A stretch of 64,000 bases of DNA from Kudoa neothunni. Its lineage: Eukaryota; Animalia; Cnidaria. Within the stretch, counting starts at the first letter, position 1. Each line of letters opens with the position of its first letter. Of this stretch, positions 6,416-45,120 are shown in pieces. The DNA lies in contig OZ199838.1 of NCBI GenBank assembly GCA_964304625.1, positions 16,475,469 through 16,539,468 of the forward strand, in the 5' to 3' direction. The notes beneath the pieces are model-generated. The model was not told the DNA's origin. It ran no database searches and saw only the letters and a program-made list of their open reading frames with translations. The translations under genes and the position numbers were made by a program.

Positions 6416-9356
6416 ATGAAATCTCAATTAGTCTCGGTTAGTTTGCTAATTGCATTTTCATGTAATTTAATTACATTATTTACATTATTAATTTCTTGAA
6501 GATATTAATATAAATACCGCTGCTGAAGAGAAAACAGCAGTCCAAACTTCTACAAAAATACTTTCGTACGACATTGTAGACGGCAAAGTTCAATTAGTTT
6601 TGACTGGGTCAGATTATGTTACAAGTACGAAAAAATGCCTCATAAAAAAGGAGAACGATGATGGAAATGGATTTGGTCAGATGAGTACTTGTGCAAGCAG
6701 CACTGAAACAGGCAAATGTGTACGTGCTTGTAAAGGAGATGACAACAAAATTGAGTTTAATGTGCTTTCACCCAGAACGAAATTTATTTATGTCTTTTCT
6801 GGGATGGAACCCGAGTCAGTAAAAGGAAAAGATAAAGGAGGGGATGTTTTTGGACTTGCTATTCGTAATTTAAATAAAATTATTCTTTTTTAATTGAAAA
6901 TAGCGCTTTTGGTGAATCCATCAATAACAGTGTCCATAGATACTAATACGAAAAAATTAAAATTGGCAGCCAAGACATGTGAAAGAGTTGACTGTCCCAT
7001 TTTTTATAAAGGTATTCAATATGTGGCCGGTACAGTAGGAGCAAACTGCGATTCTGATAATAGCAACAACCAAGTTGATTTTGACCTTATGATTCCTCAT
7101 TATGAGATGATATGCACGAATTACCCCAGCTTCTTCTATCAAATGCCAAATTCGTATATGAAAGAAAATATTGACATATACAAACCACAATACTACGTTA
7201 CCTACAAGAAAGGTGACACTGATAAGAAAAATTATATCTTAAAATTCACCAACTCATTTCCTTCCGAAATATGTTTATTCAGTATTAAGGATGCTTCAAG
7301 TGCTTCTGAAGGGCCTACGAAGATATACACATCAATGTGCGGAGGAGGAACTGATAAAAATTGTTTTGCACCTTGCGATACTGTTGAATTAACACTAGCT
7401 GAGTCTAAACCAATCGTCGAAATATTAATTCAGACTAGATATCACGATTTAAAAGAAAGCAATGGGAAAATTGAGGGTTATGCAGGAAAAAAATATGGTA
7501 TGATTTTTATTGACAAAATTAAGATATTCATTTATTATAGTTATCGAAGAGCCTGCCGCTCCGAATACACTTTTTAGTGCACAAACAGATGTAGGGATTA
7601 CGCTTAGCCCTTCTACATACAAATCAGGCACCAGTTCAGTAAAGTTTAGTTCGTGCGCTTTGAAGTATTTCCCTGCAGATAAAATCAGGAAAGTCGAAGG
7701 AGTAATTCCAAATTGCCAAACCAGTGGGGCTTGCGGAGAAGATTGTTCAACACCTTCTGTTATAGTGGGGCTGACTGCAGGGAAAGCATACATGATTGAG
7801 ATCACTCCAGAAAGCATAAATAATCATGAAAATTTTAAAGAATACCTGTTTTTCAGAACAAGTAAGGAATATATTCATAACACTCATTAAATTATTTTTA
7901 GAAGAATCTGGTACATTAAACTTCGCCGACACAGCACCCACACCAACCGACGTGACTGCTGCAATTAAAGCGGTTGCTGGTGACGTTGGATCAGCAACAA
8001 CTGAACCGACCTGTTCCTATTACGTCAGTATAAAAGATAAAAACACGTTCGTAGAAGCAGAATGTGAAGACAGCAATCCATGTAGAGGATTTTGTAAAGA
8101 CACCAAGAAGTTGATAAATCTAAACCCTAAAACAAACTACGATATTAAAGTTATTTCACACAAAGACTATGGAATCAAAATATTTAAAAATATTCCAACT
8201 AGTAAAAAAATTTGAATATAACCTAATATAAATTATATTTGTTAGCTTGGTCAACCATGACTCTTTCCCATAAATTCCTGGATAAAGGGTTTAAAGTGGT
8301 TGGAACTTTGACATCCGTTTATCCACAAGCAACATGTCACTATAAAATAAGAGAAAAAGACGGAGAGACTCTAAAAGATGTTTATTCCTGTCCAGAAGTT
8401 GTTCCTCCGTCGCCGCCGGTCGGTCCAGTCACTGAAGATATTGCTGCTCCTCCTACACCTACTCAAACTCAGGAAACGACAGAATCTAGGCTGGTCAACG
8501 TTTCAAATTTGTCTGGAATAAAAATAGCAAGATCTGGCAATGTAGAAGCAACTGATGCCACACCCACTGAACCCACTACTACTCAGTCTAGGTTTCCACC
8601 TTGCAATATACCGCCACTTTGCAGAAATATAGTAATTAGTGATGGTTATGAGGCTAATAAAGAATACCAAGTATTGGTGACGGCTGTAGGCCGATCAGAG
8701 GAAGTTACAATCAATATTCCTAAAAGTTCTATAACAAAATTAATATAGAAATTTTCTAAATTGTCATATAAATATAGATTCACTCCCAGAACTATCTCAG
8801 GATACAAACAAACAAATTACGGTAGTTATCGAGAGAGTAGGAGATACGTTAAAAATCACGTCATTGCTTCCAAAAGAAAAGGATGATAATTCAGTATGTC
8901 GATGGATACTGAGAGACATCACTGATGTTTCCCAACGAATAGTGAAAAAATGTGATTCCAGTAGAAGTAAAGTTTGCAAACTTCCAACTTGCAGATCATT
9001 CACTATTGAGGATGTAAGTGATACCAATGATTATCATTTAACACTTATTCACTCTCGAGATCCCAATGTTAAAGGTGTTGGAATAATAAAACGAGGTAAC
9101 TATTAATTAATAATAATATCAATTATTATTATTATTATAATTAATAATTTAGGAGAGACCTCCAATCAATCCAGGTACAATTTATATTTTAATGTTTAAT
9201 GTATTACATTTTTAGGGCGAGCACCTCAATGTATTAAATTTTGGGTTAATATGTTGGGATAAGTTTTCATTTAGGATTGTTGGAATCATTGTTCCAGTCG
9301 CTATTGTTATTATAGGAGTTGGATTTTACTTTGGCTATATGAAGAATAGAGGATAA
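6416..9356 (+). CDS. Cys-rich FN3-like multi-module type I membrane protein, copy 1 (846 aa, 10 exons)
   Basis: Exons 6416-6461, 6502-6864, 6904-7497, 7541-7861, 7902-8201, 8246-8725, 8778-9095, 9153-9174, 9216-9230 and 9275-9356 sum to 2541 nt (847 codons), with all introns GT-AG. N-terminus MKSQLVSVSLLIAFSY is signal-like; C-terminus is IVGIIVPVAIVIIGVGFYFGYM-KNRG*. Confidence 0.88.
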
Positions 9357-9525
9357 TTTCGATTAACTCAATTAAGCATTTGGAACAAATTAAATTATTT
9401 TTTATTAATTTATAATATCATAATTAAATATATTATGAATATTTCTCAAATTATTTACTATAAATTATTCATTTTATTTGAAATATTGTTAGTATAATAT
9501 TCGAAATTGATTGAATTTACTTAAA

Positions 9526-9700
9526 GGTAGTGGCTATATCTCAGGTACCTGATAATCAGACCGCGCTTAGGCCATACCTCAGGGAATGAATATCTCTTAA
9601 TACATTTCACATATTTTATTCATATTTTGCATATTATCTAATATTTACCTAATTTATTTTTCCGTATGTTTTGGAAGATATGGAAGAATAAGAAATTTTT
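9526..9700. mobile_element. Solo TIR of the MULE-like family at 19151 and 38591
   Basis: GGTAGTGGCTATATCTCAGGTACCTGATAATC..GGAATGAATATCTC matches the left TIR at 19151 and 38591. No partner TIR was found nearby. Confidence 0.65.
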
Positions 9701-14270: not shown

Positions 14271-14360
14271 TCAACATCATTTTTCATAATCATTATTAGA
14301 ATCAATTATGTTTTCGTATGCCGTTGTGAATGTGTGAACACTAGGTCAAATAACCGATTA

Positions 14361-14581
14361 CATTAATGGATCGGTCGTAGGTAATCCCCTTGGGGATGTG
14401 GAAATGGTAGGTACGACTGATCCTAACGTGACTTACTATTTTTCGTTTTTGGTGATAATTATGCTTGTGAACTATTCAAAGCGAGTAATTCTAAGATTAT
14501 ATAATTTTTAAAATAATTTTAAAATGATTGAACATTTTTATATGTACAATATAAAATGTACGTACGACTGATCCATTACTG
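14361..14581. mobile_element. 221-bp Tc1/mariner-type MITE (TA TSD)
   Basis: TIRs CATTAATGGATCGGTCGTA / TACGACTGATCCATTACTG with TA on both sides. It is absent from the paralogous site at ~3870 (CCGATTAATTGG). Confidence 0.8.
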
Positions 14582-15500: not shown

Positions 15501-18460
15501 ATGAAAACTCAGATATTCTCAGTTAGTTTATTGATTGTATTTTCATGTAATTCTATATATATATATATATATATACGTTTATTAATTTATTAAATTTGTT
15601 TAGTTATTAATATAAATAGTGCCGTTGAAAATAAACAAGCACCTCAAACTCCTACAAAAATACTTTCGTACGATATTGTAGGAGGAAAGGTTCAATTGGT
15701 TTTGACTGGGTCAGACTATATAACGGATTCAAAAAAATGTCTCATAAGAAAAGAGAAGGATGATGGAAATGGATTTGATCAGATACATCCCTGTGTAGGT
15801 AGCGATGAAACCAATGGGAGAGACAAATGCGTACGTGCTTGTGCAGGAAATGACAACACATTAGCATTTAATGTGCTTTCACCCAGAACAAAGTTTATCT
15901 ATGTATATTCCGGAGTGCAGGCTTCAGAAATTCTAGCCAAAAATAATGGCGGAGAGGTTTTTGGACTAGCTATTCGTAATTTAAACAAAATTATTCTTTT
16001 TTAATTTGAAGTAGCGCTCTTGGTGAATCCAAAAATCACGATATCCACAGATGCATCATCGAAAAAATTAACGCTTGCAGCCAAGACATGTAAAAATGTT
16101 GACTGTCCCATTTTTTATAAAGGTATTCAATACGCGACTGGTGCAGGAGGGGCTGCTTGTGAAACTGATAACACCGCCAACCAAGTTGACTTTGACCTTA
16201 TGATTCCTCACTACGAGATGATATGTACGAATTACCCAAGCTTCTTTTATCATATGCCAAATCCGTACATGAAAGAAAATATTGACATATACAAACCCCA
16301 ATATTACGTTACTCACAAAAATGTTGACACTAAGACAAATTATGTCCTGAAATTTACCAACTCATTTCCTTCCGAAATGTGTTTATTTAGTATTAAGGAT
16401 GCTTCAACTGATGCTAGGGAACCTACTAACGAATACGCATCAGTATGTGGAGGAGGAACCGATAAAAACTGTTACGCACCTTGTGATAATGTTGAATTAA
16501 CACTTACTGTTTCCAAACGAATCGTTGAAATATTAATTCAGACTAGACATCATAATTTAGATCAAAACAATGGAAACATTGGGGGCTATAAAGATAAAAA
16601 ATATGGTATTATTTTTATTAAGAAAATGTAGATATTTATTTATTATAGCTATCGATGAGCCTGAAGCCGCAAATACACTTTTTAGTACGCCAACAACTAT
16701 AGGGATTACACTTAACCTATCTGCATACAATACAGCTTCTGTCAGCCCAAAATTTGGTACATGTACTTTAAAGCATTTTCCTGCTGATAAAATCAGAAAG
16801 ACTCCAGAGGATGTTTTGCAATGCAACGATACCGATTCTTGTGAAAGTGTTTGTGCTACTCCTTCTACTATAAAGGGGCTGACTGCAGGGAAAGCATACA
16901 TAATTGAGATCACTCCGACAACCATCAGTAATCCAGAAAATTTTAAAGAATACTTGTTTTTCAGAACAAGTAAGGAATATATTCATAACACTCATTAAAT
17001 TATTTTTAGAAGAATCTGGTACATTAACCTTCGCCGACACAGCACCCACACCAACCGACGTGACTGCTGCAATTAAAGCGGTTGCTGGTGACGTTGGATC
17101 AGCAACAACTGAACCGACCTGTTCCTATTACGTCAGTATAAAAGATAAAAACACATTTGTAGAGGCAGAATGTGAAGACAGCAACCCATGTAGAGGATTT
17201 TGTAAAGACACCAAGAAGTTGATAAATCTAAACCCTAAAACAAACTACGATATTAAAGTTGTTTCACACAAAGACTATGGAATCAAAATATTTGAAAATA
17301 TTTCAACTAGTAACAAAATTTTAATTTAAGCTAATATAAATTATATTTGTTAGCTTGGTCAACCATGACTCTTTCCCATAGATTCCTAGATAAAGGGTTT
17401 AAAGTGGCTGGAACTTTGACATCCGTTTATCCACAAGCAATATGTCACTATAAAATAAGAGAAAAAGACGGAGAGACTCTACAAGATGTTTATTCCTGTC
17501 CAGCAGTTGTCCCTCCGTCGCCACCGGTCAGTCCAGCCATTGAAGATATTGTTGCTCCTCCTACACCTACTCAAACTCAGGAAACGACAGAATCTAGGCT
17601 GGTCAGCGTTTCAAATTTGTCTGGAATAAAAATAGCAAGAGCTGGCAATGTAGAAGCAACTGATGCCACACCCACTGAACCCACTACTACTCAGTCTAGG
17701 TTTCCACCTTGCAATATACCGCCACTTTGCAGAAATATAGTAATTAGTGATGGTTATGAGGCTAATAAAGAATACCAAGTATTGGTGACGGCTGTAGGCC
17801 GATCAGAGGAAGTTACAATCAATATTCCTAAAAGTAACATATAAAGGAATTAATATAGATATTTTCTAAATTGTCATATAAATATAGATTCACTCCCAGA
17901 ACCATCTCAAGATACAAACAAACAAATTACGGTAGTTATAGAGAGAGTAGGAGATACGTTAAAAATCACGTCATTGCTTCCAAAAGAAAAGGATGATAAT
18001 TCAGTATGTCGATGGATACTGAGAGACATCACTGATGTTTCTCAACGAATAGTGAAAAAATGTGATTCCAGTAGAAGTAAAGTTCGCAAACTTCCAACTT
18101 GCAGATCATTCACTATTGAGGATGTAAGTGATACCAATGATTATCATTTAACACTTATTCACTCCCGAGATCCCAATGTTAAAGGAATTGGAATAATAAA
18201 ACGAGGTAACTAACAATTAATAGTAATATTAATTATTATAATAATTAATAATTTAGGAGAGACCTCTAATCAATCCAGGTACAATTTATATTTTAATGTT
18301 TAATGTATTACATTTTTAGGGCGAGCACATCAATGTATTAAATTTTGAGTTGACATGTTGGAATAAGTTTTCATTTAGGATTGTTGGAATCATTGTTCCA
18401 GTCGCTATTGTTGTTGTAGGGGTTGGATTTTACTTTGGTTATATGAAGAATAGAGGATAA
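15501..18460 (+). CDS. Cys-rich FN3-like type I membrane protein, copy 2
   Basis: Same 10-exon structure as copy 1 (MKTQIFSVSLLIVFS..GFYFGYMKNRG*). Intron 1 contains a (TA)n tract. There is a Cys-to-Arg change at 18085-18087. Confidence 0.87.
15554..15575. repeat. (TA)11 microsatellite in intron 1 of copy 2
   Basis: Read directly from the sequence; absent from the other four copies. Confidence 0.9.
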
Positions 18461-21400
18461 CTTTGATTAACTCAGTTTAACATTTGGAACATATTACATT
18501 ATTTCCTATTAGTTTATAATTAAATATATTATAAATATTTGTAAATTTATTTACCAATAATTATCCATTTTATTTGAAATATTGTTAGCATAATATTCAA
18601 TATTAATTTAAGTCTATCAAGAAATAAATAAATGAATATTGACAGAATTAGTTGTGATAATTTTATCATTCAATTATAAATGAAATCAATTGTATAATAA
18701 TTAATAGGATAATTTAAAGCTTAAATTTTTTTCACGTAAATAATTTACAAGTTTATTCCTAAGGATTATTTTAACAACACAAATACACTAAATTAAGATT
18801 TGTGTGTGATATCTCAGTAAAATTAGCATTAGTCTAGTTTTTATGTATTTTTATAATCCATTATAGATCTTGAATATTTTATTACAAAATTATTGAAAGA
18901 ATTTAATTCGTAATTTTTGAAGTTTCATTTTTCGGACGAAATTACGCTTGGTACATACATGCGTGCTGTCTGTTGATTGATATCACAATTCCAAAATATA
19001 TCAAAAAATTAGAAAATAAAACGATCTTTGAATTCTATAATAAATTAAAAAAGAATTAGGATAGTTCAATTTCATAAGTTTAAATCAAGACCGAACCTAA
19101 CTACCTTTCCGAATTGAATAACAGATTTTTAAGCATTGTAATTATTTGATGGATGTGGCTATATCTTAGGTACCTGATAATCCTGTCGCGCTATGACCAT
19201 ATTTCAAGGAATGAATATCTCTAAAACCACTGCATATATTTTGTTCAGATTTTAAATTTTATCTAATATTTACTTAATTTAATTTTTCGTAAGTATTAAA
19301 AAAATTTGCAGAAGAATAAGTTTTCAGTAGTGCAACCATCCTTAGTCTATCAATATCAAGGTGTAATTATATTATATTTTTAAATTTTTCGGTAAAAAAA
19401 GCATATTTACTTTTTGAATTATTTAATATAAATAATTAATTCTTCGCTTAAAGTAATTTTAGCGTCCATTGTATACCTTCGGGTTAGAATGTCAAAGATG
19501 AATTCTAGCATGTTTATATATAGAATATAGTTTATTTCCTGCGAAGATCTTATATTGTCATAATTAAATGTGATTAATTAAAATTTTGGTTATCTCAAAC
19601 ATTACAATTGGCCTCCAACAAATTTTTTGTATTCATTGGTGGGAAAGACATGAAATGAGGTTTTTAATGTGGGTCCTATAATAGAAAATAATGAATAAAA
19701 TGTTTTAGTTATTATTCACAGAAAAAAAATCTTGGAAATAAAAAAATTCGAACAGAAGTTAAAATAAAAACTAATTTTTTGATGGTGATGTTTAATCATA
19801 CTGAATTTTGTGAGGAACTTTTGAGTAAAGCTATAAGGTCCCTTAGTCCACTGGGAAAAATAACTAAGAATCATGATGACGTTTATATCGTTCGTGTCCC
19901 CAAATAAATTTGATTATTTGTTGACAAATATAACATTTACAATTTAATATAGTCGAAAATGTGTGAAATTACAGAAAAAGGAAATCTTTTATGATTTAAT
20001 TTTTGATAGTGAGAAAGAAGTGTCTCCTGTTGATTTGATAGGGATGCCACATATCAACAAGATAAAACCCGAAACAAACAAATGAATTAAAACCCCACAA
20101 GGAACGAATAAATAATTGCATTAAAGCTTTAAATAGAATACAACAACAATTATAAGTTAAAATATTATTATTGTTGGATTTTTAAACCCCAAAATTCCAT
20201 CGAAAGTAAAGCCAATTGTAGGGCTAGAAATAATTTATTTGTGAACAGTTGCGAATATAAAGATATATAAAAATAATTTGTGACATCAATAAATCGAAAA
20301 ATACAATATGACATATTAAGTTTATTTTCTGTATGTGGAAGCTGTTATATTTTATTATTCCTAACTCACATGATCAAGTCAACATATATTCCATATCTTT
20401 TAGAAATACAAAATAACACGAGAAATAAGAGAATGAAAATTTTAATATTTTGTTGTCTTATAAATGATAAATTGTTTATTTATAGAAATTTTCAAAACTA
20501 GAATAGCCGTGCAAATATTGTTTGGAACAAAAGAATGCTCCAGCTACAGATTATCAGACGATTTCTCGCTTTAGAGCGAAATTATTTGGCACTTGCGCAA
20601 GAGGTACCATCGATCCTGATGTGGAGGGATGGTTTTAGAGATATTCATTCCTTGATATATAGTCAGAGTGCGATAGGATTATCAGGTACCTGAGATATAG
20701 TCACTCCCTTATTTATTCTAACCCTCGTGTAAAAAGGGGTCCAAATAGGGTCGAACGATATTAGGATGTATTTTCTTTGACTAATTTTGAATATCCAGTT
20801 CTAATGTTTTTCTTATTTTTCTATATAACATAGATCTATACAAAAAAGTTATCAAGATAACTTTTAAATTTCTTAATCGAATATTAAAATAAAAAAATCT
20901 TCCAAAGAAAATGGCGTCTTCATTGATTCAAGATGTTTATTTAAAATTTTTGAACAGAAAGACGTAATTATAATATTATTAAGAGAACAATTTGTTGTAA
21001 AAATTATTTTATGCCTAAAATGAATAACCCAAAAATATACACTCAGGTGCGGATATACATATTTTTTGTCAGGTCATGGGTTGTTTTGAAAATAAAGGCG
21101 GTAGTATTGACATCCATGACTATGATACACCAAGTCTGTTTTATTTAACAGAAACTATGGATCAATATATAAAGAAGATTTTGTGTTGGTCGATACTGAT
21201 GACTCCCTTATTTATAAAAATGGACGTTCGTAGGGCTAGACGAATCCATCGAAAACGCAGACGCCTCCTGAAAATATGATGTGTTTTAGTCAGGATGTGA
21301 TTCATTATAACATCCAAAGGATTATTAAAAAAAGGTTGCCTTTGAGTTCTCTGAAGCGTTAAGAATAAATAAAATAATCACGAATGCAAACATAAATGCA

Positions 21401-22687
21401 TCGAATTGAAAATATCAGGAAAACTATACGAGTAAAAATTAATATTGCAGAATGATAACAAAAAATGAGATTTATTATGTTTACTCGTTCCCAAGATAAA
21501 AAAACTGACCTAGAAGATGACTTGTGTATGGCTACTTGCTGCAAAGAATATTTAGTTATTCGTGCAAAAGCTTTGACTTATCATTTTTCGATTTACGTTG
21601 TTTTTTGAACTCGCGTATAATTCACTTGAATTATTTTAACTAACATGTAATGGTAGCATTCTCATCCTTTTTTAACAACAATTATCTTAATACAAAGCCG
21701 TACTTCATGTATCAATATCCCCTTATATTTTAATTTCGTCGCTATAATATTCTTTTAATTTTATGGTTTAAAATAATTATTCAAAGATCTTAAATGTGGC
21801 AGGGGTTACTTTCTAGTTTATTACATTGATGTACTCTGTAAAATTAAAGTTATTTGAAATTCGAATAATCATAAAAACCCGTAGAATATAATAAGTATTA
21901 TAATTAAACTATTACTAAAAGTTAGAGATTTTTTATGACAATATGCAAAGTATTTAAAATCAATCAATTCAATTTTAATGATTCTCCAATTTTATTAACT
22001 TTGGGCTTTACCGCGTATATACGAGAAAATATTTTATATGAAATTATCTTTAAAAGGTACGTGTCTTGCAGCAAAACTTTTTTGGAATGTGTAAAAATAT
22101 TATTACGATAAGTTTATGCAAAAAACACTAAGATCCATATGGGCTATTTTACTCGGGGGTATCCGATTTTGGTATACTCGAACGGTAAAGGTAATGGAAC
22201 GTCATAAGCTTTTCTGTGATAAAAGTACGCGGATAGCGCTTGCAAAGGAATCAACGACATAACTGGGAATTAATCACCACAAATAAAGGAATAATAGGTC
22301 AAATATCGAAATTATATTGTTTTTTGTTTGTTCAAATATTGTAAAATTATTAAAATAACATTTAATTACGTTGTATAATAAAAGTTTTAGTCATCAAAGC
22401 TTAACGAATATAATTATAAAACAAGTAAGCATAGATGCGTTCAGAACTCTTAAAACTGTTTAATTAAATTCTTTCATCCTTATTTGTGAGAATTATGGTA
22501 AAAAGTATAAATTATAAATTTATCAGGAAAAATAAATTCACAAAAATCAAAGTATGCAATTTTCCAACAATATCAATATATCACATTGTATATATCGATG
22601 TATCAAATCCTATTGTTATGTTCATATGAATATCAATAGTTAAATCGAAATATACAGTTTAATCTGATTTACTCTCTATACCAAAAA
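18461..22687 (+). repeat. Spacer between copies 2 and 3, duplicated as the spacer between copies 4 and 5 (37859-42159)
   Basis: Collinear similarity across the spacer apart from one replaced block; 20632-22075 appears identical to 40062-41505 (offset 19430). Confidence 0.9.
19151..20708. mobile_element. Non-autonomous MULE-like element
   Basis: TIRs GGATGTGGCTATATCTTAGGTACCTGATAATCC / GGATTATCAGGTACCTGAGATATAGTCACTCCC, with degenerate 9-bp TSD TTATTTGAT / TTATTTATT. Confidence 0.8.
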
Positions 22688-25639
22688 ATGCAAACTCAGT
22701 TAGTCTCGGTTAGTTTATTGATTGCATTTGCATGTAATTTGTTTATATTGATTATTTTATTAAAATATTGTAGTTATTAATACAAATCCTACTACGGAAA
22801 GTAAACTAGCACCCCAAACTCCTACAAAAATACTTTCGTATGACATTGTTGAAAGTAAAGTGTTGTTGGTTTTGACCGGATCGGATTATGAAACGGACTC
22901 GAAAAAATGCCTCATAAGAAAAGAGAACGATAGTGGAAATGGATTCGATCAGATAAGCGATTGTGAGAATAGAGATGCACAGAGTGGGACAGACAAGTGT
23001 GTACGTGCTTGTTCAGGAAATGACAATAAAATAACGTTTAATGTGCTTTCACCAAGAACAAGATTTATCTATGTATATTCCGGAGCGCAAGCTTCAGATA
23101 TTCAAGCCAAAAATAATGGCGGAGAGGTTTTTGGACTTGCTATTCGTAATTTAAATAAAATTATTTATTTTCATTAATTAAAAATAGCGCTCTTGGTGAA
23201 TCCATCAATAACAGTGTCCATAGATACTAATACGAAAAAATTAACGCTTGCAGCCAAGACATGTAAAAAAGTTGCCTGTCCTATTGTTTATAAAGGTATT
23301 CAATACGCGGCCGGTACAATGGGAGACAATTGCGATTCTGGTAACAGCGCCAACCAAGTTGACTTTGACCTTATGATTCCTCATTATGAAATGATATGCA
23401 CAAATTATCCAAGCTTCTTTTATCATATGCCAAATCCGTACATGAAAGAAAATATTGACATATACAAACCCCAATATTACGTTACTCACAAAAATGTTGA
23501 CACTAAGACAAATTATGTCCTGAAATTTACCAATTCATTTCCTTCCGAAATTTGTTTATTCAGTATTAAGGATGCTTCAACTAATGCTGGAGAACCTACT
23601 AACGAATACGCATCCGTGTGTGGTGGAATAACGGGTAAAAAGTGTTATGCACCTTGTGACAATGTTGAATTAACACTTGCTGCGTTCAAACCAATCGTCG
23701 GAATATTAATTCAGACTAGATATCATAATTTAGATACAAGCATTAACAGCATTGAGGGCTATAAAGAGAAAAAATATGGTATTGTTTTTTAAAGTAAATG
23801 TATCTATTCATTTATTATAGCTATCGAAGAGCTTGCCGCTCCGAATACACTTTTCAGTGCGGAAACACCTGTGGGAATTACACTTAACCCCTCTGCATAC
23901 AACTCAGCCACCGGTACCGATTCAGTAAAGTTTGGTACATGTGCTTTAAAGCATTTTCCTGCCGATAAAATCCGAAAAGATGGAGGAGAAACCACTAAAT
24001 GCAACAATAATCAGGCCTGTGGAGAGGTTTGTGAAACAGCGTCTGTTATACAGCAGTTGACTGCGGGGAAAGCATACATAATTGAGATCACTCCTACAAC
24101 CATAACTGGTCACACAGATTTTAAAGAATACCTGTATTTCAGAACACGTAAGTAATATATTCATTTCACTTATTAAATTATTCTTAGAAGAATCTGGCAC
24201 GTTAAAATTCACTGACGCAGCACCTTCAGCAACTGACGTGACTGCTGCAATTAAAGCGGTTGATGGTGACGTTGGATCAGCAACAACTGAACCGACCTGT
24301 TCCTATTACGTCAGTATAAAAGATAAAAACACGTTCGTAGAAGCAGAATGTGAAGACAGCAATCCATGTAGAGGATTTTGTAAAGACACCAAGAAGTTGA
24401 TAAATCTAAACCCTAAAACAAACTACGATATTAAAGTTGTTTCACACAAAGACTATGGAATCAAAATATTTGAAAATATTTCAACTAGTAAAATAATTTA
24501 AATTTAAGCTAATATAAAATATATTTGTTAGCTTGGTCAACCATGACTCTTTCCCATAGATTCCTAGATAAAGGGTTTAAAGTGGCTGGAACTTTGACAT
24601 CCGTTTATCCACAAGCAACATGTCATTATAAAATAAGAGAAAAAGACGGAGAGACTCTAAAAGATGTTTATTCCTGTCCAGCAGTTGTCCCTCCGTCGCC
24701 GCCGGTCAGTCCAGTCACTGAAGATATTGCTGCTCCTCCTCCTACATCTACTCAAACTGAGGTAGCGCAAGAATCTAGGCTGGTCAGCGTTTCAAATTTG
24801 TCTGGAATAAAAATAGCAAGAGCAAGTAATGCAGAAGAAGAGAATTCGACATCCACTGAACCCGCCATTACTCAATCTATGTTTCCACCATGTAGCAAAC
24901 CACCACTCTGTAGCAATATAATAATTAGTGATGGTTATGAGGCTAATAAAGAATACCAAGTATTGGCGACGGCTGTAGGTCGTTCAGAGGAAGTTACAAT
25001 CGATATTCCTAAAAGTACTATAACAAAATTAATATAGATATTTTCTAAATTGTCATATAAATATAGATTCACTCCCAGAACCATCTCAAGATACAAACAA
25101 ACAAATTACGGTAGTTATAGAGAGAGTAGGAGATACGTTAAAAATCACGTCATTGCTTCCAAAAGAAAAGGATGATAATTCAGTATGTCGATGGATACTG
25201 AGAGACATCACTGATGTTTCTCAACGAATAGTGAAAAAATGTGATTCCAGTAGAAGTAAAGTTTGCAAACTTCCAACTTGCAGATCATTCACTATTGAGG
25301 ATGTAAGTGATACCAATGATTATCATTTAACACTTATTCACTCCCGAGATCCCAATGTTAAAGGAATTGGAATAATAAAACGAGGTAACTAACAATTAAT
25401 AGTAATATTAATTATTATTATAATTAATAATTTAGGAGAAACTTCGAATCAATCCAGGTAAAACAAATAAAATAATGTTTAATGTAATGTATTTCTAGGG
25501 CGAGCACCTCAATGTATTAAATTTTGAGTTGATATGTTGGAATAAGTTTTCATTTAGGATTGTTGGAATCATTGTTCCAGTCGCTATTGTTATTGTAGGG
25601 GTTGGATTTTACTTTGGTTATATGAAGAATAAAGGATAA
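22688..25639 (+). CDS. Cys-rich FN3-like type I membrane protein, copy 3
   Basis: Same exon structure (MQTQLVSVSLLIAFA..GFYFGYMKNKG*); ORF-track exons run 22860-25392. Confidence 0.87.
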
Positions 25640-30490: not shown

Positions 30491-30502
30491 CGTTTGTAGC
30501 TA

Positions 30503-34911: not shown

Positions 34912-37858
34912 ATGAAAACTCAGTTAGTCACAGTTAGTTTATTAATTGCATTTTCATGTAGTTTATTTACATTATTTATTTTATTAATTTCTTGTAGATA
35001 TTAATATAAATACCGCTGCTGAAAATAATCCAACAGCCCAAGCTCCTACAAAAATACTTTCGTACGACATTGTAGGAGGAAAGGTTCAATTGGTTTTGAC
35101 TGGGTCAGATTATGTAACGGATTCAAAAAAATGTCTCATAAGAAAGGAGAAGAATGATGGAAATGGATTTGATCAGATAAGTACTTGTATAAGCAGCACT
35201 GAAGAAACAGGAAAATGTGTACGTGATTGTGCAGGAAATGACAACACAATAGCTTTTGATGTGCTTTCACCTAGAACAAAATTTATTTATGTTTTTTCTG
35301 GAGCGAGTACTGAAACAATAAAAAATAGTAATACTGGTGGGGATGTTTATGGACTTGCTATTCGTAATTCAAATAAAATTATTCATTTTCTTTAATGAAA
35401 ATTAGCTCTATTGGTGAATCCAAAAATCACAATATCGATTGATGCTACTTTGAAACAATTAACGCTTGCAGCTAAAACTTGTCCAAAAGTTGCCTGTCCC
35501 ATTTTTTATAAAGGTATTCAATACGCGACTGGAGCAGTAGGGACTGCTTGCGATTCTGATAACAGCAATAACAAAGTTGATTTTGACCTTATGATTCCTC
35601 ATTATGAAATGATATGCACAAATTACCCTAGCTTCTTTTATCATATGCCAAATCCGTACATGAAAGAAAATATTGACATATACAAACCCCAATACTACGT
35701 TACTTACAAGAAAGGTGACACTGAAAAGAAAAAATATATTCTAAACTTCACCAACTCATTCCCTTCCGAAATTTGTTTATTCAGTATTAAAGACGCTTCG
35801 AGTGCTGCTACAGGATCTACAAAGAATTATGCATCAGTGTGCGGAGGAGGAACTGACAAAAAGTGTTTTGCACCTTGTGATACTGTTGAATTAACACTGG
35901 CTGAGTCTAAACCAATCGTCGAAATATTAATTCAGACCAGATATCATAATTTAGATACAAGCATTAGCAGCATTGAGGGCTTTAAAGGGAAAAAATATGG
36001 TATTATTTCTATTAAGAAGACGTAGCTATTCATTTATTATAGCTATCCAAGAGAATGACGCTACGAATACACTTTTTAGTACACAAACGAATGTAGGGAT
36101 TACACTTAACCCCTCTGCATACAATTCAGCATCTACCGGACCAAAATTCACCACATGTTCATTAAATCATTTTCCTGCTGACAAAATCAGGAAAACCAAT
36201 GGAGAAACAACAAATTGCCAACCCAGTCAAGCTTGCACTCAGACTTGTGCAACACCTTCGGTTATACAAGGGCTGGACGCAGGAAAAGCTTACATAATTG
36301 AGATTACTCCGGCATCTATAGCTGATCACACGGATTTTAAAGAATACCTGTTTTTCAGAACAAGTAAATAATATTCATGTCGTTTATTTAATTATTCTTA
36401 GAAAAATCAGATGGATCAAACTTCGTCGACACAGCACCCACACCAACCGACGTGACTGCTGCAATTAAAGCGATTGATGGTGACGTTGGATCAGCAACAA
36501 CTGAACCGACCTGTTCCTATTACGTCAGTATAATAGATAAAAACACATTCGTCGAAGCCGAATGTGAAGACAGCAATCCATGTAGAGGATTTTGTAAAGA
36601 CACCAAGAAGTTGATAAATCTAAACCCTAAAACAAACTATGATATTAAAGTTATTTCACACAAAGACTATGGAATCAAAATATTCAAAAATATTTCAACT
36701 AGTAAAATAATTTTAATTTAAGCTAATATAAATTATATTCTTTAGCTTGGTCAACCATGACCCTTTCCCAAAGATTCCTAGATAAAGGGTTTAAAGTGGC
36801 TGGAACTTTGACATCCGTTTATCCACAAGCAATATGTCACTATAAAATAAGAGAAAAAGACGGAGAGACTCTACAAGATGTTTATTCCTGTCCAGCAGTT
36901 GTCCCTCCGCCGCCGCCGGTCAGTCCAGCCATTGAAAATATTTCTGCTCCTCCTTCACCTACTCAAACTCAGGAAACGACAGAATCTAGGCTGGTCAGCG
37001 TTTCAAATTTGTCTGGAATAAAAATAGCAAGAACTGGCAATGTAGAAGCAACTGATGCCACACCCACTGAACCCGCCATTACTCAATCTATGTTTCCACC
37101 ATGTAGCAAACCACCACTCTGCAGCAATATAATAATTAGTGATGGTTATGAGGCTAATAAAGAATATCAAGTATTGGTGACGGCTGTAGACCGATCAGAG
37201 GAAGTTACAATCAATATTCCTAAAAGTAACATATAAAGGAATTAATATTGATATTTTCTAAATTGTCATATAAATATAGATTCACTCCCAGAACTATCTC
37301 AGGATACAAACAAACAAATTACGGTAGTTATCGAGAGAGTAGGAGATACGTTAAAAATCACGTCATTGCTTCCAAAAGAAAAGGATGATAATTCAGTATG
37401 TCGATGGATACTGAGAGACATCACTGATGTTTCCCAACGAATAGTGAAAAAATGTGAATCGAGTAGAAGTAAAGTTTGCAGACTTCCAACTTGCAGATCA
37501 TTCACTATTGAGGATGTAAGTGATACCAATGATTATCATTTAACACTTATTCACTCCCGAGATCCCAATGTTAAAGGAATTGGAATAATAAAACGAGGTA
37601 ACTAACAATTAATAGTAATATTAATTATTATTATTATTATAATTAATAATTTAGGAGAAACTTCGAATCAATCCAGGTAAAACTAATAAAATAATGTTTA
37701 ATGTAATATATTTCTAGGGCGAGCACCTCAATGTATTAAATTTTGAGTTGATATGTTGGAATAAGTTTTCATTTAGGATTGTTGGAATCATTGTTCCAGT
37801 CGCTATTGTTATTGTAGGGGTTGGATTTTACTTTGGTTATATGAAGAATAAAGGATAA
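34912..37858 (+). CDS. Cys-rich FN3-like type I membrane protein, copy 4
   Basis: Same exon structure (MKTQLVTVSLLIAFSY..GFYFGYMKNKG*). Confidence 0.87.
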
Positions 37859-38590: not shown

Positions 38591-40138
38591 GGATGTGGCT
38601 ATATCTCAGGTACCTGATAATCCTGTCGCGCTATGACCATATTTCAAGGAATGAATATCTCTAAAATTACTGCATATATTTTTTTCATATTTAACATATT
38701 ATCTAATATTTACTTAACTTAATTTCTCATAAGTATTAAAAATATTTGCAGTTGAATAAGTTTTCAGTAGTGCAACCATCCTTAGTCTATCAATACTTAA
38801 GTGTAATTATATTATATTTTTAAATTTTTCGGTAAAAAAAGCATATTCACTTTTTGAATTATTTAATATAAATAATTAATTCTTCGCTTAAAGTAATTTT
38901 AGCGTCCATTGTATACTTTCGGGTTAGAATGTTAAAGATGAATTCTAGCATGTTTATATATAGAATATAGTTTATTTCCTGCGAAGATCTTATATTGTCA
39001 TAATAAAATATGAATAATTAAAATTTTGATTATCTCAAACATTACACATGGCCTCTAAAAATATTTTTATATTCATCGGTGGAAACACGTATGAAATAAA
39101 GTTTTTAAATGTTGGTCCTATAATAGAAAATAATAAATAAAATGCTTCAGTTAATATTTGCAGGAAAAAACTCTTGGAAACAAAAAAATTCGAACAGAAG
39201 TTAAAATAAAAACAAATTTTTTGATGGTGATGGTTAATATTACTGAATTTTGTGGGGAACTATTTTATAAGGCTATAAGGTCCCTTAGTCCACTGGGAAA
39301 AATAACTAAGAATCATGATGACGTTTATATCGTTCGTGTCCCCAAATAAATTTGATTATTTGTTGACAAATATAACATTTACAATTTAATATAGTCGAAA
39401 ATGTGTGAAATTACAGAAAAAGGAAATCTTTTATGATTTAATTTTTGATAGTGAGAAAGAAGTGTCTCCTGTTGATTTGATAGGGATGCCACATATCAAC
39501 AAGATAAAACCCGAAACAAATAAATGAATTAAAACCACACAAGGAACGAATAAATAATTGCAATAAAGCTGAAAATAGAATACAACAACCATTATTAAAA
39601 GTCAAAATATTATTATTGTTGTTGGATTTTTAAACCTCAAAATTTCATCGAAAATAGAAACAATTTTAAGGCTAGAAAGAATTTATTTGTGAACAATTGT
39701 GGATATAAGGATATACAAAAATAATTTATGACATCAATAAATAAAAAAATTCAATATGACATATTAAGTTTATTTTTTGTATATGGAAGCTATTATATTT
39801 TAGTATTCCTAACCCACATGATCAAGTCAACATATATTCCATATCTTTTAGAAATACAAAATAACACGAGAAAAAAAGAGATTGAAAATTTTAATATTTT
39901 GTTGTCTTATAAATGATAATTATACTTAAATATTGATGGACTCAGAATGGTAGTTGCTCTACTGAAAATTTATTCTTCTGCAAATTTTTTTTATACTTAC
40001 GAAAAATTAAGTTAAATAAATATTAGATAATATGCGGAATGTGAACAAAATATATGCATTAGTTTTAGAGATATTCATTCCTTGATATATAGTCAGAGTG
40101 CGATAGGATTATCAGGTACCTGAGATATAGTCACTCCC
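38591..40138. mobile_element. Non-autonomous MULE-like element (duplicate of 19151-20708, ~210-bp TIRs intact)
   Basis: Same termini and TSD as 19151-20708; the right TIR extends inward to ~39930. Confidence 0.8.
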
Positions 40139-42159
40139 TTATTTATTCTAACCCTCGTGTAAAAAGGGGTCCAAATAGGGTCGAACGATATTAGGATGTA
40201 TTTTCTTTGACTAATTTTGAATATCCAGTTCTAATGTTTTTCTTATTTTTCTATATAACATAGATCTATACAAAAAAGTTATCAAGATAACTTTTAAATT
40301 TCTTAATCGAATATTAAAATAAAAAAATCTTCCAAAGAAAATGGCGTCTTCATTGATTCAAGATGTTTATTTAAAATTTTTGAACAGAAAGACGTAATTA
40401 TAATATTATTAAGAGAACAATTTGTTGTAAAAATTATTTTATGCCTAAAATGAATAACCCAAAAATATACACTCAGGTGCGGATATACATATTTTTTGTC
40501 AGGTCATGGGTTGTTTTGAAAATAAAGGCGGTAGTATTGACATCCATGACTATGATACACCAAGTCTGTTTTATTTAACAGAAACTATGGATCAATATAT
40601 AAAGAAGATTTTGTGTTGGTCGATACTGATGACTCCCTTATTTATAAAAATGGACGTTCGTAGGGCTAGACGAATCCATCGAAAACGCAGACGCCTCCTG
40701 AAAATATGATGTGTTTTAGTCAGGATGTGATTCATTATAACATCCAAAGGATTATTAAAAAAAGGTTGCCTTTGAGTTCTCTGAAGCGTTAAGAATAAAT
40801 AAAATAATCACGAATGCAAACATAAATGCATCGAATTGAAAATATCAGGAAAACTATACGAGTAAAAATTAATATTGCAGAATGATAACAAAAAATGAGA
40901 TTTATTATGTTTACTCGTTCCCAAGATAAAAAAACTGACCTAGAAGATGACTTGTGTATGGCTACTTGCTGCAAAGAATATTTAGTTATTCGTGCAAAAG
41001 CTTTGACTTATCATTTTTCGATTTACGTTGTTTTTTGAACTCGCGTATAATTCACTTGAATTATTTTAACTAACATGTAATGGTAGCATTCTCATCCTTT
41101 TTTAACAACAATTATCTTAATACAAAGCCGTACTTCATGTATCAATATCCCCTTATATTTTAATTTCGTCGCTATAATATTCTTTTAATTTTATGGTTTA
41201 AAATAATTATTCAAAGATCTTAAATGTGGCAGGGGTTACTTTCTAGTTTATTACATTGATGTACTCTGTAAAATTAAAGTTATTTGAAATTCGAATAATC
41301 ATAAAAACCCGTAGAATATAATAAGTATTATAATTAAACTATTACTAAAAGTTAGAGATTTTTTATGACAATATGCAAAGTATTTAAAATCAATCAATTC
41401 AATTTTAATGATTCTCCAATTTTATTAACTTTGGGCTTTACCGCGTATATACGAGAAAATATTTTATATGAAATTATCTTTAAAAGGTACGTGTCTTGCA
41501 GCAAACTTTTTGGAATGTGGCAAAATATTATGCCAATAAGTTTATACAAAAGACTAAGGTCCATATGGGCTATTTTACTCGGGGGTGTCCGATTTTGGTA
41601 TACTCAGATGGTTAAAGTAGAGGAACTTCATAGGGTTTTCTGTGATAAAAATACACGGATAGCGCTTGCCAATGAATTAACAATATAACTGGTAATTAGT
41701 CACCACAAATATAGGAAAAATAGGTCAAATATCAAAATTATATCGTTTCTTCTTTGTTCAAATATTGTAAAATTATTAAAATTAAAATAACTTTTAATTA
41801 CACTGTATAGAAATTATTTATAAGTGTGTTATTTTATTTTTCACCTGTATAGGAAAATTTTTAGCCACCAAAGTTTAACGAATTTAATTATAAAACAAGT
41901 AAGCTTAGATGCTCTCAAAAATGTTAAACGTTTACTTAAATTCTTTAATCTTTATTTTAGAGAATTATGGTAAAATGTATAAATTATAAATTTATCAGGA
42001 AAAATAAATTCACAAAAATCAAAGTATGCAATTTTCCAACAATATCAATATATCACATTGTATATATCGATGTATCAAATCCTATTGTTATGTTCATATG
42101 AATATCAATAGTTAAATCGAAATATACAGTTTAATCTGATTTACTCTCTGTAGCAAAAA

Positions 42160-45120
42160 ATGCAAACTCAATTAGTCTCGGTTAGTTTATTGATTGCATT
42201 TGCATGTAATTTGTTTATATTGATTATTTTATTAAATTCTTGTAGTTATTAATACAAATCCTACTACGGAAAATAAACTAGCACCCCAAACTCCTACAAA
42301 AATACTTTCGTATGACATTGTTGAAAGTAAAGTGTTGTTGGTTTTGACCGGATCGGATTATGAAACGGACTCGAAAAAATGCCTCATAAGAAAAGAGAAC
42401 GATAGTGGAAATGGATTTGATCACGTAAGTACATGCGAGAATAGAGATACACAGGTTGAGACAGGCAAGTGTGTACGTGCTTGTGCAGGAAATGACAACA
42501 CATTAGCGTTTAATGTGCTTTCACCCAGAACAAAGTTTATCTATGTATATTCCGGAACAGATGCCGCACAAATTCAAAATAGTAATAACGGTGGGGATGT
42601 TTTTGGACTTGCTATTCGTAATTTAAATAAAATTATTCTTTTTTAATTGAAAATAGCGCTTTTGGTGAATCCATCAATAACAGTGTCCATAGATACTAAT
42701 ACGAAAAAATTAAAATTGGCAGCCAAGACATGTAAAAGTGTTGAATGTCCCATTTTTTATAAAGGTATTCAATACGCGGCCGGTACAGTAGGGACTGCTT
42801 GCGATTCTGAGAACAACGATAACAAAGTTGATTTTGACCTTATGATTCCCCACTACGAGATAATATGTGCGAATTACCCAAGCTTCTTCTACCAAATGCC
42901 AAATCCATATATGAAAAAAAATATCGACATATACAGACCCCAATACTACGTTACTTACAAAAAAGATGACGCTGATAAGAAAAATTATATCCTAAAATTC
43001 ACCAACTCATTTCCTTCCGAAATATGTTTATTCAGTATTAAAGACGCTTCGAGTGCTGCTACAGGATCTACAAAGAATTATGCATCAGTGTGCGGAGGAG
43101 GAACTGATAAAAAGTGTTTTGCACCTTGTGATACTGTTGAATTAACACTAGCTGAGTCTAAACCAATCGTCGAAATATTAATTCAGACTAGATATCATAA
43201 TTTAGATACAAGCATTACCAGCATTGAGGGCTATAAAGAGAAAAAATATGGTATTGTTTTTTAAAGAAAATGTATCTATTCATTTATTATAGCTATCGAA
43301 GAGACTGACGCTACGAATACACTTTTTAGTACACAAACGGATGTAGGGATTACACTCAACCCTTCTCCATACAACACAGCCACCGGTACCAATTCATTAA
43401 AGTTTGTTACGTGTGATTTAAAGCATTTTCCTGCCGATAAAATCAGAAAGACTACAGGGGATGTTTTGCAATGCAGCGATAATAACTCTTGTGGGCAGGC
43501 TTGTGAAACACCTTCTGTTATACGGCAGTTGACTGCGGGGAAAGCATATATAATTGAGATTACGCCAACAGCCATAGCTGATCACACAGATTTTAAAGAA
43601 TACCTGTTTTTCAGAACAAGTAAGGAATATATTCATAACACTTATTAAATTATTCTTAGAAGAATCTGATTCATCAAACTTCGCCGACACAGCACCCACA
43701 GCAACCGACGTGACTGCTGCAATTAAAGCGGTTGCTGGTGACGTGTTAAAAACAGACGCAACTGAACCGACTTGTTCATATTACGTCAGTATAGTAGATA
43801 AAAACACATTCGTCGAAGCCGAATGTGAAGACAGCAACCCATGTAGAGGATTCTGTAAAGATACTAAGAAATTGATAAATCTAAACCCCAAAACATACTA
43901 TGATATTAAAGTTGTTTCACATAAAAACTATGGAATCAAAATATTTAAAAATATTCAAACTAGTAAAAAAAATTTTAATTTAAGCTATTATAAATTATTT
44001 TCGTTAGCTTGGTCAACCATGACCCTATCCCAAAGATTCCTAGATAAAGGGTTTAAAGTGGCTGGAACTTTGACATCCGTTTATCCACAAGCAACATGTC
44101 ACTATAAAATAAGAGAAAAAAACGGAGAGACTCTAAAAGATGTTTATTCCTGTCCAGAAGTTGTCCCTCCGCCGCCGTCTGTCAGTCCAGCCACTGAAGA
44201 TATTTCTGATGCTCCTCCTTCACCTACTCAAACTCAGGAAACGATAGAATCAAGGCCGGTCAGCGTTTCAAGATTGCCTGGAATAAAAATAGCAAGAACT
44301 GGTAATATAGAAGCAACTGATGCCACACCCACCGAATCCACTACTACTCAATCTAAGTTTCCACCATGTAGCAAACCACCACTCTGCAGCAATATAATAA
44401 TTAGTGATGGTTATGAGGCTAATAAAGAATACCAAGTATTGGTAACGGCTGTAGGCCGATCAGAGGAAGTTACAATCAATATTCCTAAAAGTAATATATA
44501 AAGGAATTAATATAGATATTTTCTAAATTGTCATATAAATATAGATTCACTCCCAGAACCATCTCAAGATACAAACAAACAAATTATGGTAGTTATTGAG
44601 AGAGTAGGTGATACGTTAAAAATCACGTCATTGCTTCCTAAAGAAAAGGATGATAATTCAGTATGTCGATGGATACTGAGAGACATCACTGATGTTTCTC
44701 AACGAATAGTGAAAAAATGTGATTCCAGTAGAAGTAAAGTTTGCAGACTTCCAACTTGCAGATCATTCACTATTGAGGATGTAAGTGATACCAATGATTA
44801 TCATTTAACGCTTATTCACTCCCGAGATTCCAATGTTAAAGGAATTGGAATAATAAAACGAGGTGACTAACAATTAATAATAATATCAATTATTATTATT
44901 ATAATTAATAATTTAGGAGAGACCTCTAATCAATCCAGGTAAAATTAATATTTTAATATTTAATGTATTATATTCTTAGGGCGAGCACCTCAATGTATTA
45001 AACTTTGAGTTGATATGTTGGAATAAGTTTTCGTTTAGGATTGTTGGAATCATTGTTCCAGTCGCTATTGTTATTATAGGAGTTGGATTTTACTTTGGTT
45101 ATATGAAGAATAGAGGATAA
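42160..45120 (+). CDS. Cys-rich FN3-like type I membrane protein, copy 5
   Basis: Same exon structure (MQTQLVSVSLLIAFA..GFYFGYMKNRG*). Intron 5 (43963-44007, 45 nt) is in frame and stop-free. Confidence 0.87.

What the first reader, a model, noticed from the sequence alone, without database searches (positions are those of the whole stretch)
6416..45120. Five-gene tandem array of an unrecognised surface protein with variable distal and constant proximal modules: candidate antigenic-variation or diversified-receptor locus
Seen: five spliceable paralogs, each with signal peptide, 7 Cys modules, TM helix and a KNRG/KNKG tail. Modules 1-4 differ heavily between copies, while module 5, module 7, the TM exon and parts of adjacent introns are almost identical (the intron-6 end TTTTCTAAATTGTCATATAAATATAG is the same in all five). 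Known: a variable exposed N-terminus, constant anchor, minimal tail and tandem arrays in repeat-rich DNA characterise parasite variant antigens (Giardia VSP, trypanosome VSG, Babesia VESA) and cnidarian allorecognition Alr genes. Inference: this is an analogous family in a small-intron eukaryote. I do not recognise it as a described family.
Basis: partly seen in the sequence, partly recalled or inferred. Interest (0 to 1): 0.92.

Follow-up and report, generated by a model that had tools for sequence, protein, structure and literature searches.

The report
Kudoa FN3-like surface-protein gene cluster
These are five intact genes from a family of at least 230 apparently undescribed surface-protein genes in a tuna muscle parasite; their "variable tip, constant stalk" comes mostly from neighbouring copies overwriting each other's back ends, and antigen switching is possible but not shown.

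Summary
The array is real: five intact 10-exon paralogs (846-853 aa) with signal peptide, seven Cys modules, one TM helix and a 6-residue tail. The genome is the myxozoan Kudoa neothunni. The genes are 5 of 11 in a cluster and belong to a family of at least 230 (about 260-300) copies on all three chromosomes, with unnamed relatives in four other samples and no description in the papers searched. Modules fold as FN3/Ig-like sandwiches. The distal-proximal gradient exists (M4 67%, M7 97%), but silent divergence falls in step. M7 is 96% identical within each of two clusters and 67% between them. The 'constant anchor' is therefore cluster-specific gene conversion, as in fish protocadherin clusters. 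Module dN/dS is 0.2-0.7 and variable loops are near neutral; after allowing for recombination only module 4 keeps a modest positive-selection signal. It fails VSP, Alr, VSG and cytokine-receptor membership tests. No parasite RNA was available, so splicing, surface location and switching are untested. Best reading: a host-facing surface repertoire shuffled by conversion; strict antigenic variation about 20%. The scan reported this family earlier on other DNA of this genome.

The parts
6416..9356 (+). g1, 10 exons, 846 aa. Exons: 6416-6461 signal peptide; 6502-6864 M1; 6904-7497 M2+M3; 7541-7861 M4; 7902-8201 M5; 8246-8725 M6 (Pro/Thr-rich insert); 8778-9095 M7; 9153-9174 and 9216-9230 stalk micro-exons; 9275-9356 TM + tail
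   Evidence: folds
15501..18460 (+). g2, 848 aa, same exon structure; lacks one Cys in M7
22688..25639 (+). g3, 851 aa, same exon structure
34912..37858 (+). g4, 847 aa, same exon structure
42160..45120 (+). g5, 853 aa, same exon structure
   Evidence: gene-specific pieces seen without differences in read-derived contigs of run X1
6310..6415 (+). About 110 nt upstream of the ATG conserved in all ten 5' regions examined: putative promoter/5' UTR carried by every copy (shown for g1)
   Evidence: function inferred
8752..8777 (+). Intron-6 3' end identical in all five copies (also 17862, 25041, 37254, 44519); inside the homogenised 3' block
20632..22075 (+). 1,444-bp non-coding spacer upstream of g3, identical to 40062-41505; two more copies in the cluster are 91% alike. 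Candidate very recent conversion tract
40062..41505 (+). Identical copy of that spacer upstream of g5, although g3 and g5 exons 3-4 differ by about 14-17%

Best explanation
The five genes are a tandem cluster of a large, old myxozoan family of single-pass surface proteins: a rod of seven disulphide-stabilised FN3/Ig-like domains on one TM helix with a short basic tail and no signalling motif. The family grows by birth-and-death duplication. Neighbouring copies exchange patches by ectopic gene conversion, which makes the genes mosaics and flattens the 3' half (M5 to TM, with introns and UTR) within each cluster. Modules 1-4 stay distinct: their framework is under purifying selection, their Cys-bounded loops change at about the neutral rate, and module 4 may be under mild diversifying selection. 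The most likely role is a host-facing surface repertoire (a coat or adhesin set, probably used by stage or cell layer) whose diversity blunts antibody recognition or widens ligand binding. Shown: gene structure, family size, mosaicism, conversion gradient, selection estimates; fold is predicted. Inferred: surface location, host-facing role, selection against homogenisation of M1-M4. Not shown: expression, switching.
For: Gene models and hydropathy. Family size: 230 exact hits of a CG-x-C[YF]APC coding pattern, control 0; 249 vs 25 with a second pattern; capture estimate 264-296; 3 of 150 exon-3 matches hold a stop. Fold: AF2 exon 3 pLDDT 80, exon 4 pLDDT 68; top structural matches FN3 for M3 and M4, Ig-like for M2, Z 6-7.3; weak fn3 hits in 11 of 23 exon-5 sequences. 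Conversion: dS gradient; nearest paralog changes exon by exon, incompatibility test p 0.001 in exons 2, 3, 4, 6 (0.008 and 0.017 in 5 and 7), a 238-nt identical tract in exon 3; M7 96/96% within and 67% between clusters, M6 85/92% within and 53% between; same tree-length gradient in a chromosome-2 cluster. Selection: framework pN/pS 0.4-0.5, independently chosen variable M4 sites 1.09 and 0.81; M4 LRT 9.0 with segment trees. Context: stage-wise antigen change is reported for K. thyrsites and other myxozoans (PMC8481699).
Against: No RNA or protein evidence: three RNA runs held no Kudoa reads, not even over the NAC-domain gene used as control. Positive selection is weak: gone in M1-M3, not significant in M6 (LRT 4.4) and absent from module 4 of the second cluster. 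Structural Z-scores below 8 show only a common fold. Kudoa sporogonic stages sit inside muscle cells, partly hidden from antibody (PMC8481699). The polarity of conversion could be mechanistic rather than selected.
Confidence: 0.55

Rival explanations
1. True antigenic variation: one or a few members are expressed at a time from their own promoters (var/VSP-like in-situ switching), and conversion renews the repertoire.
For: 230-300 mostly open copies in a genome with about 5,300 predicted proteins (PMC12239612 Table 2); each copy keeps a conserved upstream block; mosaic genes; minimal tail; antigenic variation suggested for myxozoans without a known mechanism.
Against: No expression data; loops only about neutral; no sign of a dedicated expression site or silent archive; the 'constant' part is not constant across the family.
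Confidence: 0.2
2. A parasite-parasite recognition or adhesion code (Alr- or clustered-protocadherin-like): distal modules give isoform-specific homophilic binding that sorts the cells of the cell-within-cell plasmodium or spore.
For: Tandem beta-sandwich ectodomain with module-wise exons, as in cnidarian Alr (PMC9546547). Divergent N-terminal and cluster-specifically homogenised C-terminal ectodomains are what fugu protocadherin clusters show (PMC1852091). Architecture is conserved in a distant AT-rich relative (L046), and one member has a clear best partner in another sample (58% vs 40%).
Against: A 6-residue tail with no ITAM/ITIM or other signalling motif; no V-set/I-set evidence; 230-300 isoforms seem excessive for an organism with few cell types (inference).
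Confidence: 0.12
3. A structural surface or matrix-contact protein whose copy number rose largely non-adaptively in a repeat-rich genome; the variable loops are merely unconstrained.
For: dN/dS below 1 in every module; variable sites near 1; transposon relics between copies; broken copies in the cluster.
Against: Most copies keep open frames and purifying selection on the framework; M1-M4 escape homogenisation in the same direction in two clusters on different chromosomes; residual M4 signal.
Confidence: 0.1
4. Decoy receptors for host cytokines, by resemblance of tandem Cys-bearing FN3 pairs to cytokine-receptor ectodomains.
For: Foldseek's best matches for M2+M3 are IL-2Rgamma, IL-17RA and IL-7Ralpha (E 4e-4 to 2e-3).
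Against: TM-scores about 0.3, rmsd about 13 A, 8-12% identity; no WSxWS motif; these hits reflect any tandem FN3 pair.
Confidence: 0.03

Closest known systems
Clustered protocadherins of teleosts (fugu; PMC1852091)
   Same: Tandem paralogs, divergent distal ectodomains, membrane-proximal ectodomains homogenised by conversion within but not between subclusters
   Different: Cadherin repeats in one variable exon spliced to shared constant exons; here FN3-like modules, each gene complete with its own TM exon and 6-residue tail
Hydractinia Alr family (PMC9546547)
   Same: Cnidarian, clustered, single-pass, unusual Ig/FN3-like domains with extra Cys, domains on separate exons
   Different: Alr has 1-3 V/I-set domains plus one FN3-like domain and a cytoplasmic tail, several with ITAM/ITIM; 41 loci in one complex (number from my own knowledge of that paper). 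Here seven modules with an intradomain four-Cys pattern, no tail, 230+ dispersed loci; no sequence similarity detected
Diplomonad VSPs and the VSP-like genes reported in Sphaerospora molnari (bioRxiv 10.64898/2026.02.11.705288)
   Same: Multigene, signal peptide, Cys-containing ectodomain, single TM, short basic C-terminal motif; the latter also in a myxozoan
   Different: VSPs have over 10% Cys and many CXXC/CXC motifs; here 3.3% Cys, none of either motif, beta-sandwich fold; 230+ versus 18 genes
FN3 domain superfamily (PF00041)
   Same: Predicted FN3-type beta-sandwich (M3, M4), EF-loop Leu and strand-F Tyr pattern in M4 and M5, symmetrical phase-1 exons
   Different: g1 exons score below the Pfam threshold; no conserved strand-B Trp (2 Trp per protein); two inferred disulphides per module
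Trypanosome VSG / Plasmodium var (own knowledge)
   Same: Large repertoire, mosaic formation by segmental conversion, conserved membrane-proximal part within types
   Different: No GPI signal, no expression-site or silent-archive evidence, unrelated fold, switching not shown

Membership tests
VSP (diplomonad / S. molnari) | More than 10% Cys | tested here: not met
   3.2-3.3%; definition
VSP (diplomonad / S. molnari) | More than 5 CXXC or CXC motifs | tested here: not met
   0 of either
VSP (diplomonad / S. molnari) | Signal peptide, single TM, short conserved tail | tested here: met
   (hydropathy; no dedicated predictor)
VSP / VSG / var (antigenic-variation systems) | Mutually exclusive expression with switching | not testable with these tools
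   No parasite reads in three RNA runs
VSG | GPI anchor; helical N-terminal domain | tested here: not met
   TM followed by basic tail; the folded modules are beta-sandwiches
Alr | N-terminal V-set plus I-set domains | tested here: inconclusive
   M1 was not folded; M2 is Ig-like of no clear set; M1 shares the four-Cys spacing of the FN3-like modules
Alr | 1-3 Ig domains and a single FN3-like spacer | tested here: not met
   Seven modules; M3 and M4 FN3-like by structure, M5 by weak profile hits
Alr | Cytoplasmic tail, in several members with ITAM/ITIM | tested here: not met
   Tail of about 6 residues in all 28 loci read
Class I cytokine receptor | WSxWS motif and signalling tail | tested here: not met
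FN3 (PF00041) | Pfam gathering score 25 bits | tested here: not met
   g1 exon 5 15.3 bits, other g1 exons no hit; best family member E 9e-5
FN3 (PF00041) | FN3-type beta-sandwich fold | tested here: met
   M4: nearly all top 50 matches FN3, Z to 7.3, rmsd about 3 A over about 80 residues, TM 0.5-0.58 to FN3 monobodies; M3 likewise. Predicted models, middling Z
Clustered protocadherins | Cadherin repeats and shared constant exons | tested here: not met
   No cadherin hit; each gene has its own TM exon
Diversifying (immune-selected) antigen family | dN/dS above 1 in exposed variable regions after allowing for recombination | tested here: inconclusive
   M4 LRT 9.0 (2 df, omega 2.4 on 12% of sites); M1-M3 none; cross-validated variable sites 1.09 [0.88-1.39] and 0.81 [0.64-1.07]

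The most novel reading that the evidence does not exclude
An animal (a cnidarian parasite) runs a protist-style antigenic-variation system from a home-grown family of 230-300 FN3-like coat genes, about 5% of its gene count, expressed one or a few at a time and renewed by segmental gene conversion.
Probability: 0.2. Interest if true: 0.92.

Novelty: new variant of a known kind. Interest (0 to 1): 0.6.

Why it matters
Kudoa has lost most ancestral animal genes, yet this family amounts to roughly 4-6% of the published protein count. The genome paper's main text never mentions surface proteins or fibronectin; its annotation ran on a RepeatModeler-masked genome without RNA, which could have hidden the family (inference). 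Antigen change is a suspected but molecularly unexplained evasion route in myxozoans. This family gives concrete candidates, module-level hypotheses (M4 loops) and markers for diagnosis or vaccine work in fish parasites. It is also a clear case in which a 'variable tip, constant anchor' pattern arises from polar gene conversion and should not be read as proof of antigenic variation.

Tried and rejected
Haplotype or assembly artefact: rejected. The copies differ by 13-16% in DNA, lie between different transposon relics, and gene-specific pieces of g5 are recovered without differences at flank-like depth in read-derived contigs (probably the assembly's own sample, so not independent).

Single-tree site models gave significant M2a/M8 tests for exons 3, 4 and 6 (LRT 16-22), but these fell to 0, 9.0 and 4.4 with segment-specific trees, so most were recombination artefacts. 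These are my own GY94 implementations with naive empirical Bayes, not codeml.

Pfam, PDB sequence and ESM Atlas searches found no named family. The NMDA-receptor/Lig_chan-Glu_bd hits of exon 5 are a short chance motif match. Homolog searches returned only unnamed ENA/Logan fragments; the length window of the search for homologous proteins hides full-length proteins. hhalign between modules was weak (best M4-M5, E 0.0025); cross-module HMM hits on the outside homologs were better (E 1e-4 to 1e-6 in a small database). The source organisms of the outside homologs were not identified.

The 73 identity pairs typed were paired by eye and are not used; I use 30 loci paired by coordinate.
Full report
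**1. Observation.** Self-comparison shows five copies of a 3.2-3.4-kb unit, 84-87% identical in DNA. Each splices with GT-AG introns of 38-57 nt into a stop-free ORF of 846-853 aa: g1 6416-9356, g2 15501-18460, g3 22688-25639, g4 34912-37858, g5 42160-45120. Exon 1 is a hydrophobic leader. Exons 2-7 are all phase 1-1 and carry seven modules (exon 3 has two). Two micro-exons (22 and 15 nt) give a Ser/Thr stalk, and exon 10 gives the only strong TM segment and a tail of about six residues. The quoted intron-6 end occurs exactly five times against 0.00 expected. Amino-acid identity among the five is M1 72, M2 82, M3 78, M4 67, M5 89, M6 86, M7 97 and TM/tail 94%.

**2. Organism.** The assembly has 40.26 Mb in 4 contigs. 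Its 18S 3' region looked myxosporean, Kudoa-like, to me (from memory). An earlier scan note named Kudoa neothunni, and PMC12239612 gives that assembly as 40.2 Mb, three chromosomes plus a mitochondrion, GC 30.4%, intron length 49 nt, 5,316 predicted proteins. All of this fits. The paper's main text has no occurrence of 'surface', 'fibronectin' or 'paralog'. It annotated a RepeatModeler-masked genome without transcript support.

**3. Not five genes.** A coding pattern for CG-x-C[YF]APC has 230 exact hits (at least one site counted twice) and 0 in the reversed control; a second pattern gives 249 versus 25. On chromosome 1 the first pattern captures 77-87% of loci found by protein search, giving about 260-300 copies. 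Only 3 of 150 exon-3 matches contain a stop. The window holds genes 5-9 of an 11-gene cluster at C1 16.44-16.56 Mb, three of which look broken. Outside this genome about 15 unnamed fragments were found. Those traced come from four samples, three with several paralogs. One contig (L046, GC 17%) matches M1-M5 and M7 in the same order and ends in a stalk, a TM helix and a KKK tail. These sources are presumably other myxozoans but were not identified. No named homologue and no paper describing the family were found.

**4. Fold.** Pfam gives only sub-threshold fn3 hits for module 5. AlphaFold2 models of exon 3 (pLDDT 80) and exon 4 (pLDDT 68) are beta-sandwiches. For M4 almost all top-50 structural matches are FN3 domains (Z up to 7.3, rmsd about 3 A over about 80 residues), with TM 0.5-0.58 to FN3 monobodies. 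M3 also matches FN3, and M2 matches Ig-like sandwiches of no clear set. Z below 8 shows only a common fold. M1, M3, M4, M5 and M7 share a four-Cys spacing (17-22, 6-9 and 4-5 residues apart); M6 has a Pro/Thr-rich insert after its second Cys; M2 differs. In M2, Cys25 and Cys48 tend to be lost together in homologs (alignment A1), which suggests a disulphide. The best Foldseek hits for M2+M3 are cytokine receptors, but TM is about 0.3 and there is no WSxWS. M1, M6 and M7 were not folded.

**5. What makes the gradient.** If constraint alone made the proximal part constant, silent sites would still diverge. They do not: dS is 0.44, 0.40, 0.31 and 0.52 in M1-M4 but 0.17, 0.10 and 0.06 in M5-M7, and introns 6, 7 and 9 are 93-95% identical against 80% for intron 1. 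A second cluster on chromosome 2 shows the same gradient in tree length (5.8, 2.6, 1.4, 0.8 for exons 4-7). M7 is 96% identical within each cluster but 67% between them; M6 is 85% and 92% within and 53% between, about as divergent between clusters as M4 (49%). For 30 distant loci paired by coordinate, identity to g1 is 54-60% in exon 3 and only 39-47% in exon 7, lower in all 30. So the anchor is constant only among neighbours. Direct signs of exchange: the nearest paralog changes from exon to exon; incompatible sites are rarer at short range than expected (p 0.001 in exons 2, 3, 4 and 6; 0.008 in 5; 0.017 in 7); g4 shares a 238-nt identical tract in exon 3 with a paralog outside the window; distances in exons 2-4 do not predict those in exons 5-7. 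A 1,444-bp spacer is identical upstream of g3 and g5 while their exons 3-4 differ by about 14-17%. That is a very recent conversion unless it is an assembly error. Fugu protocadherin clusters show the same pattern, divergent 5' and subcluster-specific homogenised 3' ectodomains (PMC1852091), so it is not diagnostic of antigenic variation.

**6. Selection.** Module-wide dN/dS is 0.21-0.68. Single-tree site models suggest positive selection in exons 3, 4 and 6. With a separate tree for each segment of about 35 codons, the M1a/M2a statistic is 0.9 for exon 2, 0 for exon 3, 4.4 for exon 6 and 9.0 for exon 4 (2 df, p about 0.01 before correction for four tests; omega 2.4 on 12% of sites). To avoid circular choice of 'hypervariable' sites, I defined them in one cluster and measured them in the other. 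In M4 they give pN/pS 1.09 [0.88-1.39] and 0.81 [0.64-1.07], against 0.40 and 0.49 for the rest. The same positions vary in both clusters (r 0.60), mostly the loops around the Cys-bounded segment. The framework is conserved, the loops are about neutral, and M4 may be mildly diversifying. That M1-M4 escape homogenisation in the same direction in two clusters hints at selection to keep them distinct, but this is inference.

**7. Expression and artefact checks.** I laid reads on g5 plus the downstream NAC-domain gene as a control. Three RNA runs carrying the host's species label gave no read on either, so expression and splicing are untested. Contigs of run X1 recover gene-specific parts of g5 without differences at depth 8-13, like the flank (8-9), and pile up to 130-170 over the shared 3' end. 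This is what separate real paralogs would give, though the tool warns that depth is no copy number, and the run is probably the assembly's own sample.

**8. Mechanism.** Most likely (0.55): a host-facing surface repertoire. Every copy keeps a conserved 110-nt upstream block, so copies can plausibly be transcribed in place. The protein would be a seven-domain rod with no signalling tail, presenting variable loops on M1-M4. Duplication and segmental conversion keep producing new combinations. Stage-wise antigen change is reported for K. thyrsites and other myxozoans, and antigenic variation has been suggested without a mechanism (PMC8481699). Rivals: strict switching (0.2), a parasite cell-recognition code (0.12), largely non-adaptive expansion of a structural protein (0.1), cytokine decoy (0.03).

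**9. Comparison with known systems.** It is not a VSP (3.3% Cys, no CXXC or CXC), not an Alr (seven modules, no tail), not VSG-like (TM, beta-sandwich) and not a cytokine receptor. It is built like a tail-less multi-FN3 adhesion protein and evolves like a protocadherin cluster or a variant-antigen family. I class it as a new variant of a known kind: a parasite multigene surface family on an undescribed four-Cys FN3-like scaffold.

**10. Earlier scan notes and limits.** The scan has reported this family from other windows of this genome with similar conclusions (s1-701596, s1-711974, s1-687407, s1-701629). These are AI notes, not independent support; the numbers above are my own tests. Limits: no further genome DNA could be fetched; spliced proteins were analysed only in local scripts and searched exon by exon, with the joined search left out; codon models are my own implementation; signal peptide and TM calls rest on hydropathy.

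**Verdict.** A real and undescribed, very large surface-protein family in a reduced animal parasite, worth follow-up. The specific antigenic-variation reading is unproven, and its main sequence argument (variable tip, constant anchor) is better explained by cluster-specific gene conversion. Interest 0.6.

Noticed in passing
L041 (G000:C2:5424779-5428248): The only 18S rRNA match found is interrupted: the 3' part of the 18S abuts unrelated AT-rich DNA with a zinc-finger-like reading frame, as expected for a site-specific non-LTR retrotransposon inserted in 18S. The 5' 18S part was not found by the search, which used a stricter first look.
   Followed up: no
window 9096-9274 and equivalents in g2-g5: Retaining intron 7 or skipping the 22-nt exon 8 ends the protein just after M7 in all five copies, which would give a secreted ectodomain; skipping the 15-nt exon 9 stays in frame. 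Computed only, no RNA.
   Followed up: partly
window 59612-60073 (+): 153-aa ORF with three hydrophobic segments and a QG motif that recalls TM5-TM7 of a secretin/adhesion GPCR (my impression); no Pfam hit at E 0.1.
   Followed up: partly
window 47376-47600 (-): NAC-domain exon (BTF3/NAC-beta-like), Pfam E 6.6e-17; ordinary housekeeping neighbour.
   Followed up: yes
window about 11900-14200, 31000-31900, 32070-33040: Decayed DNA transposons between the genes: piggyBac-like (DDE_Tnp_1_7), Tigger/pogo-like (HTH_Tnp_Tc5) and Tc1/mariner-like; an ISXO2/Merlin-like relic near 1000-2000 (by eye).
   Followed up: partly
window 9510-9700, 19135-19370, 20630-20710, 38575-38810, 39916-40140: A short dispersed repeat, in both orientations, sits downstream of g1, g2 and g4 and at the head of the identical spacer; related pieces occur at about 20 places genome-wide. 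Probably a MITE.
   Followed up: partly
G000:C1:12428979-12429572 (-): A divergent family member is 58% identical to P0006 from an outside sample while all others are 45% or less, suggesting a conserved one-to-one orthologue inside an otherwise fast-turning family.
   Followed up: no
G000:C1:16461141, 16468437, 16548297; L012: Cluster neighbours with partial exon-3 matches, a stop or split exons; one has an extra G in a G-run and could be a sequencing error rather than a pseudogene.
   Followed up: no
G000:C2:2377616 and 2395587: Two family-pattern hits carry extra Cys codons within the C-G...C-Y-A-P-C loop, a possible subfamily with additional disulphides.
   Followed up: no
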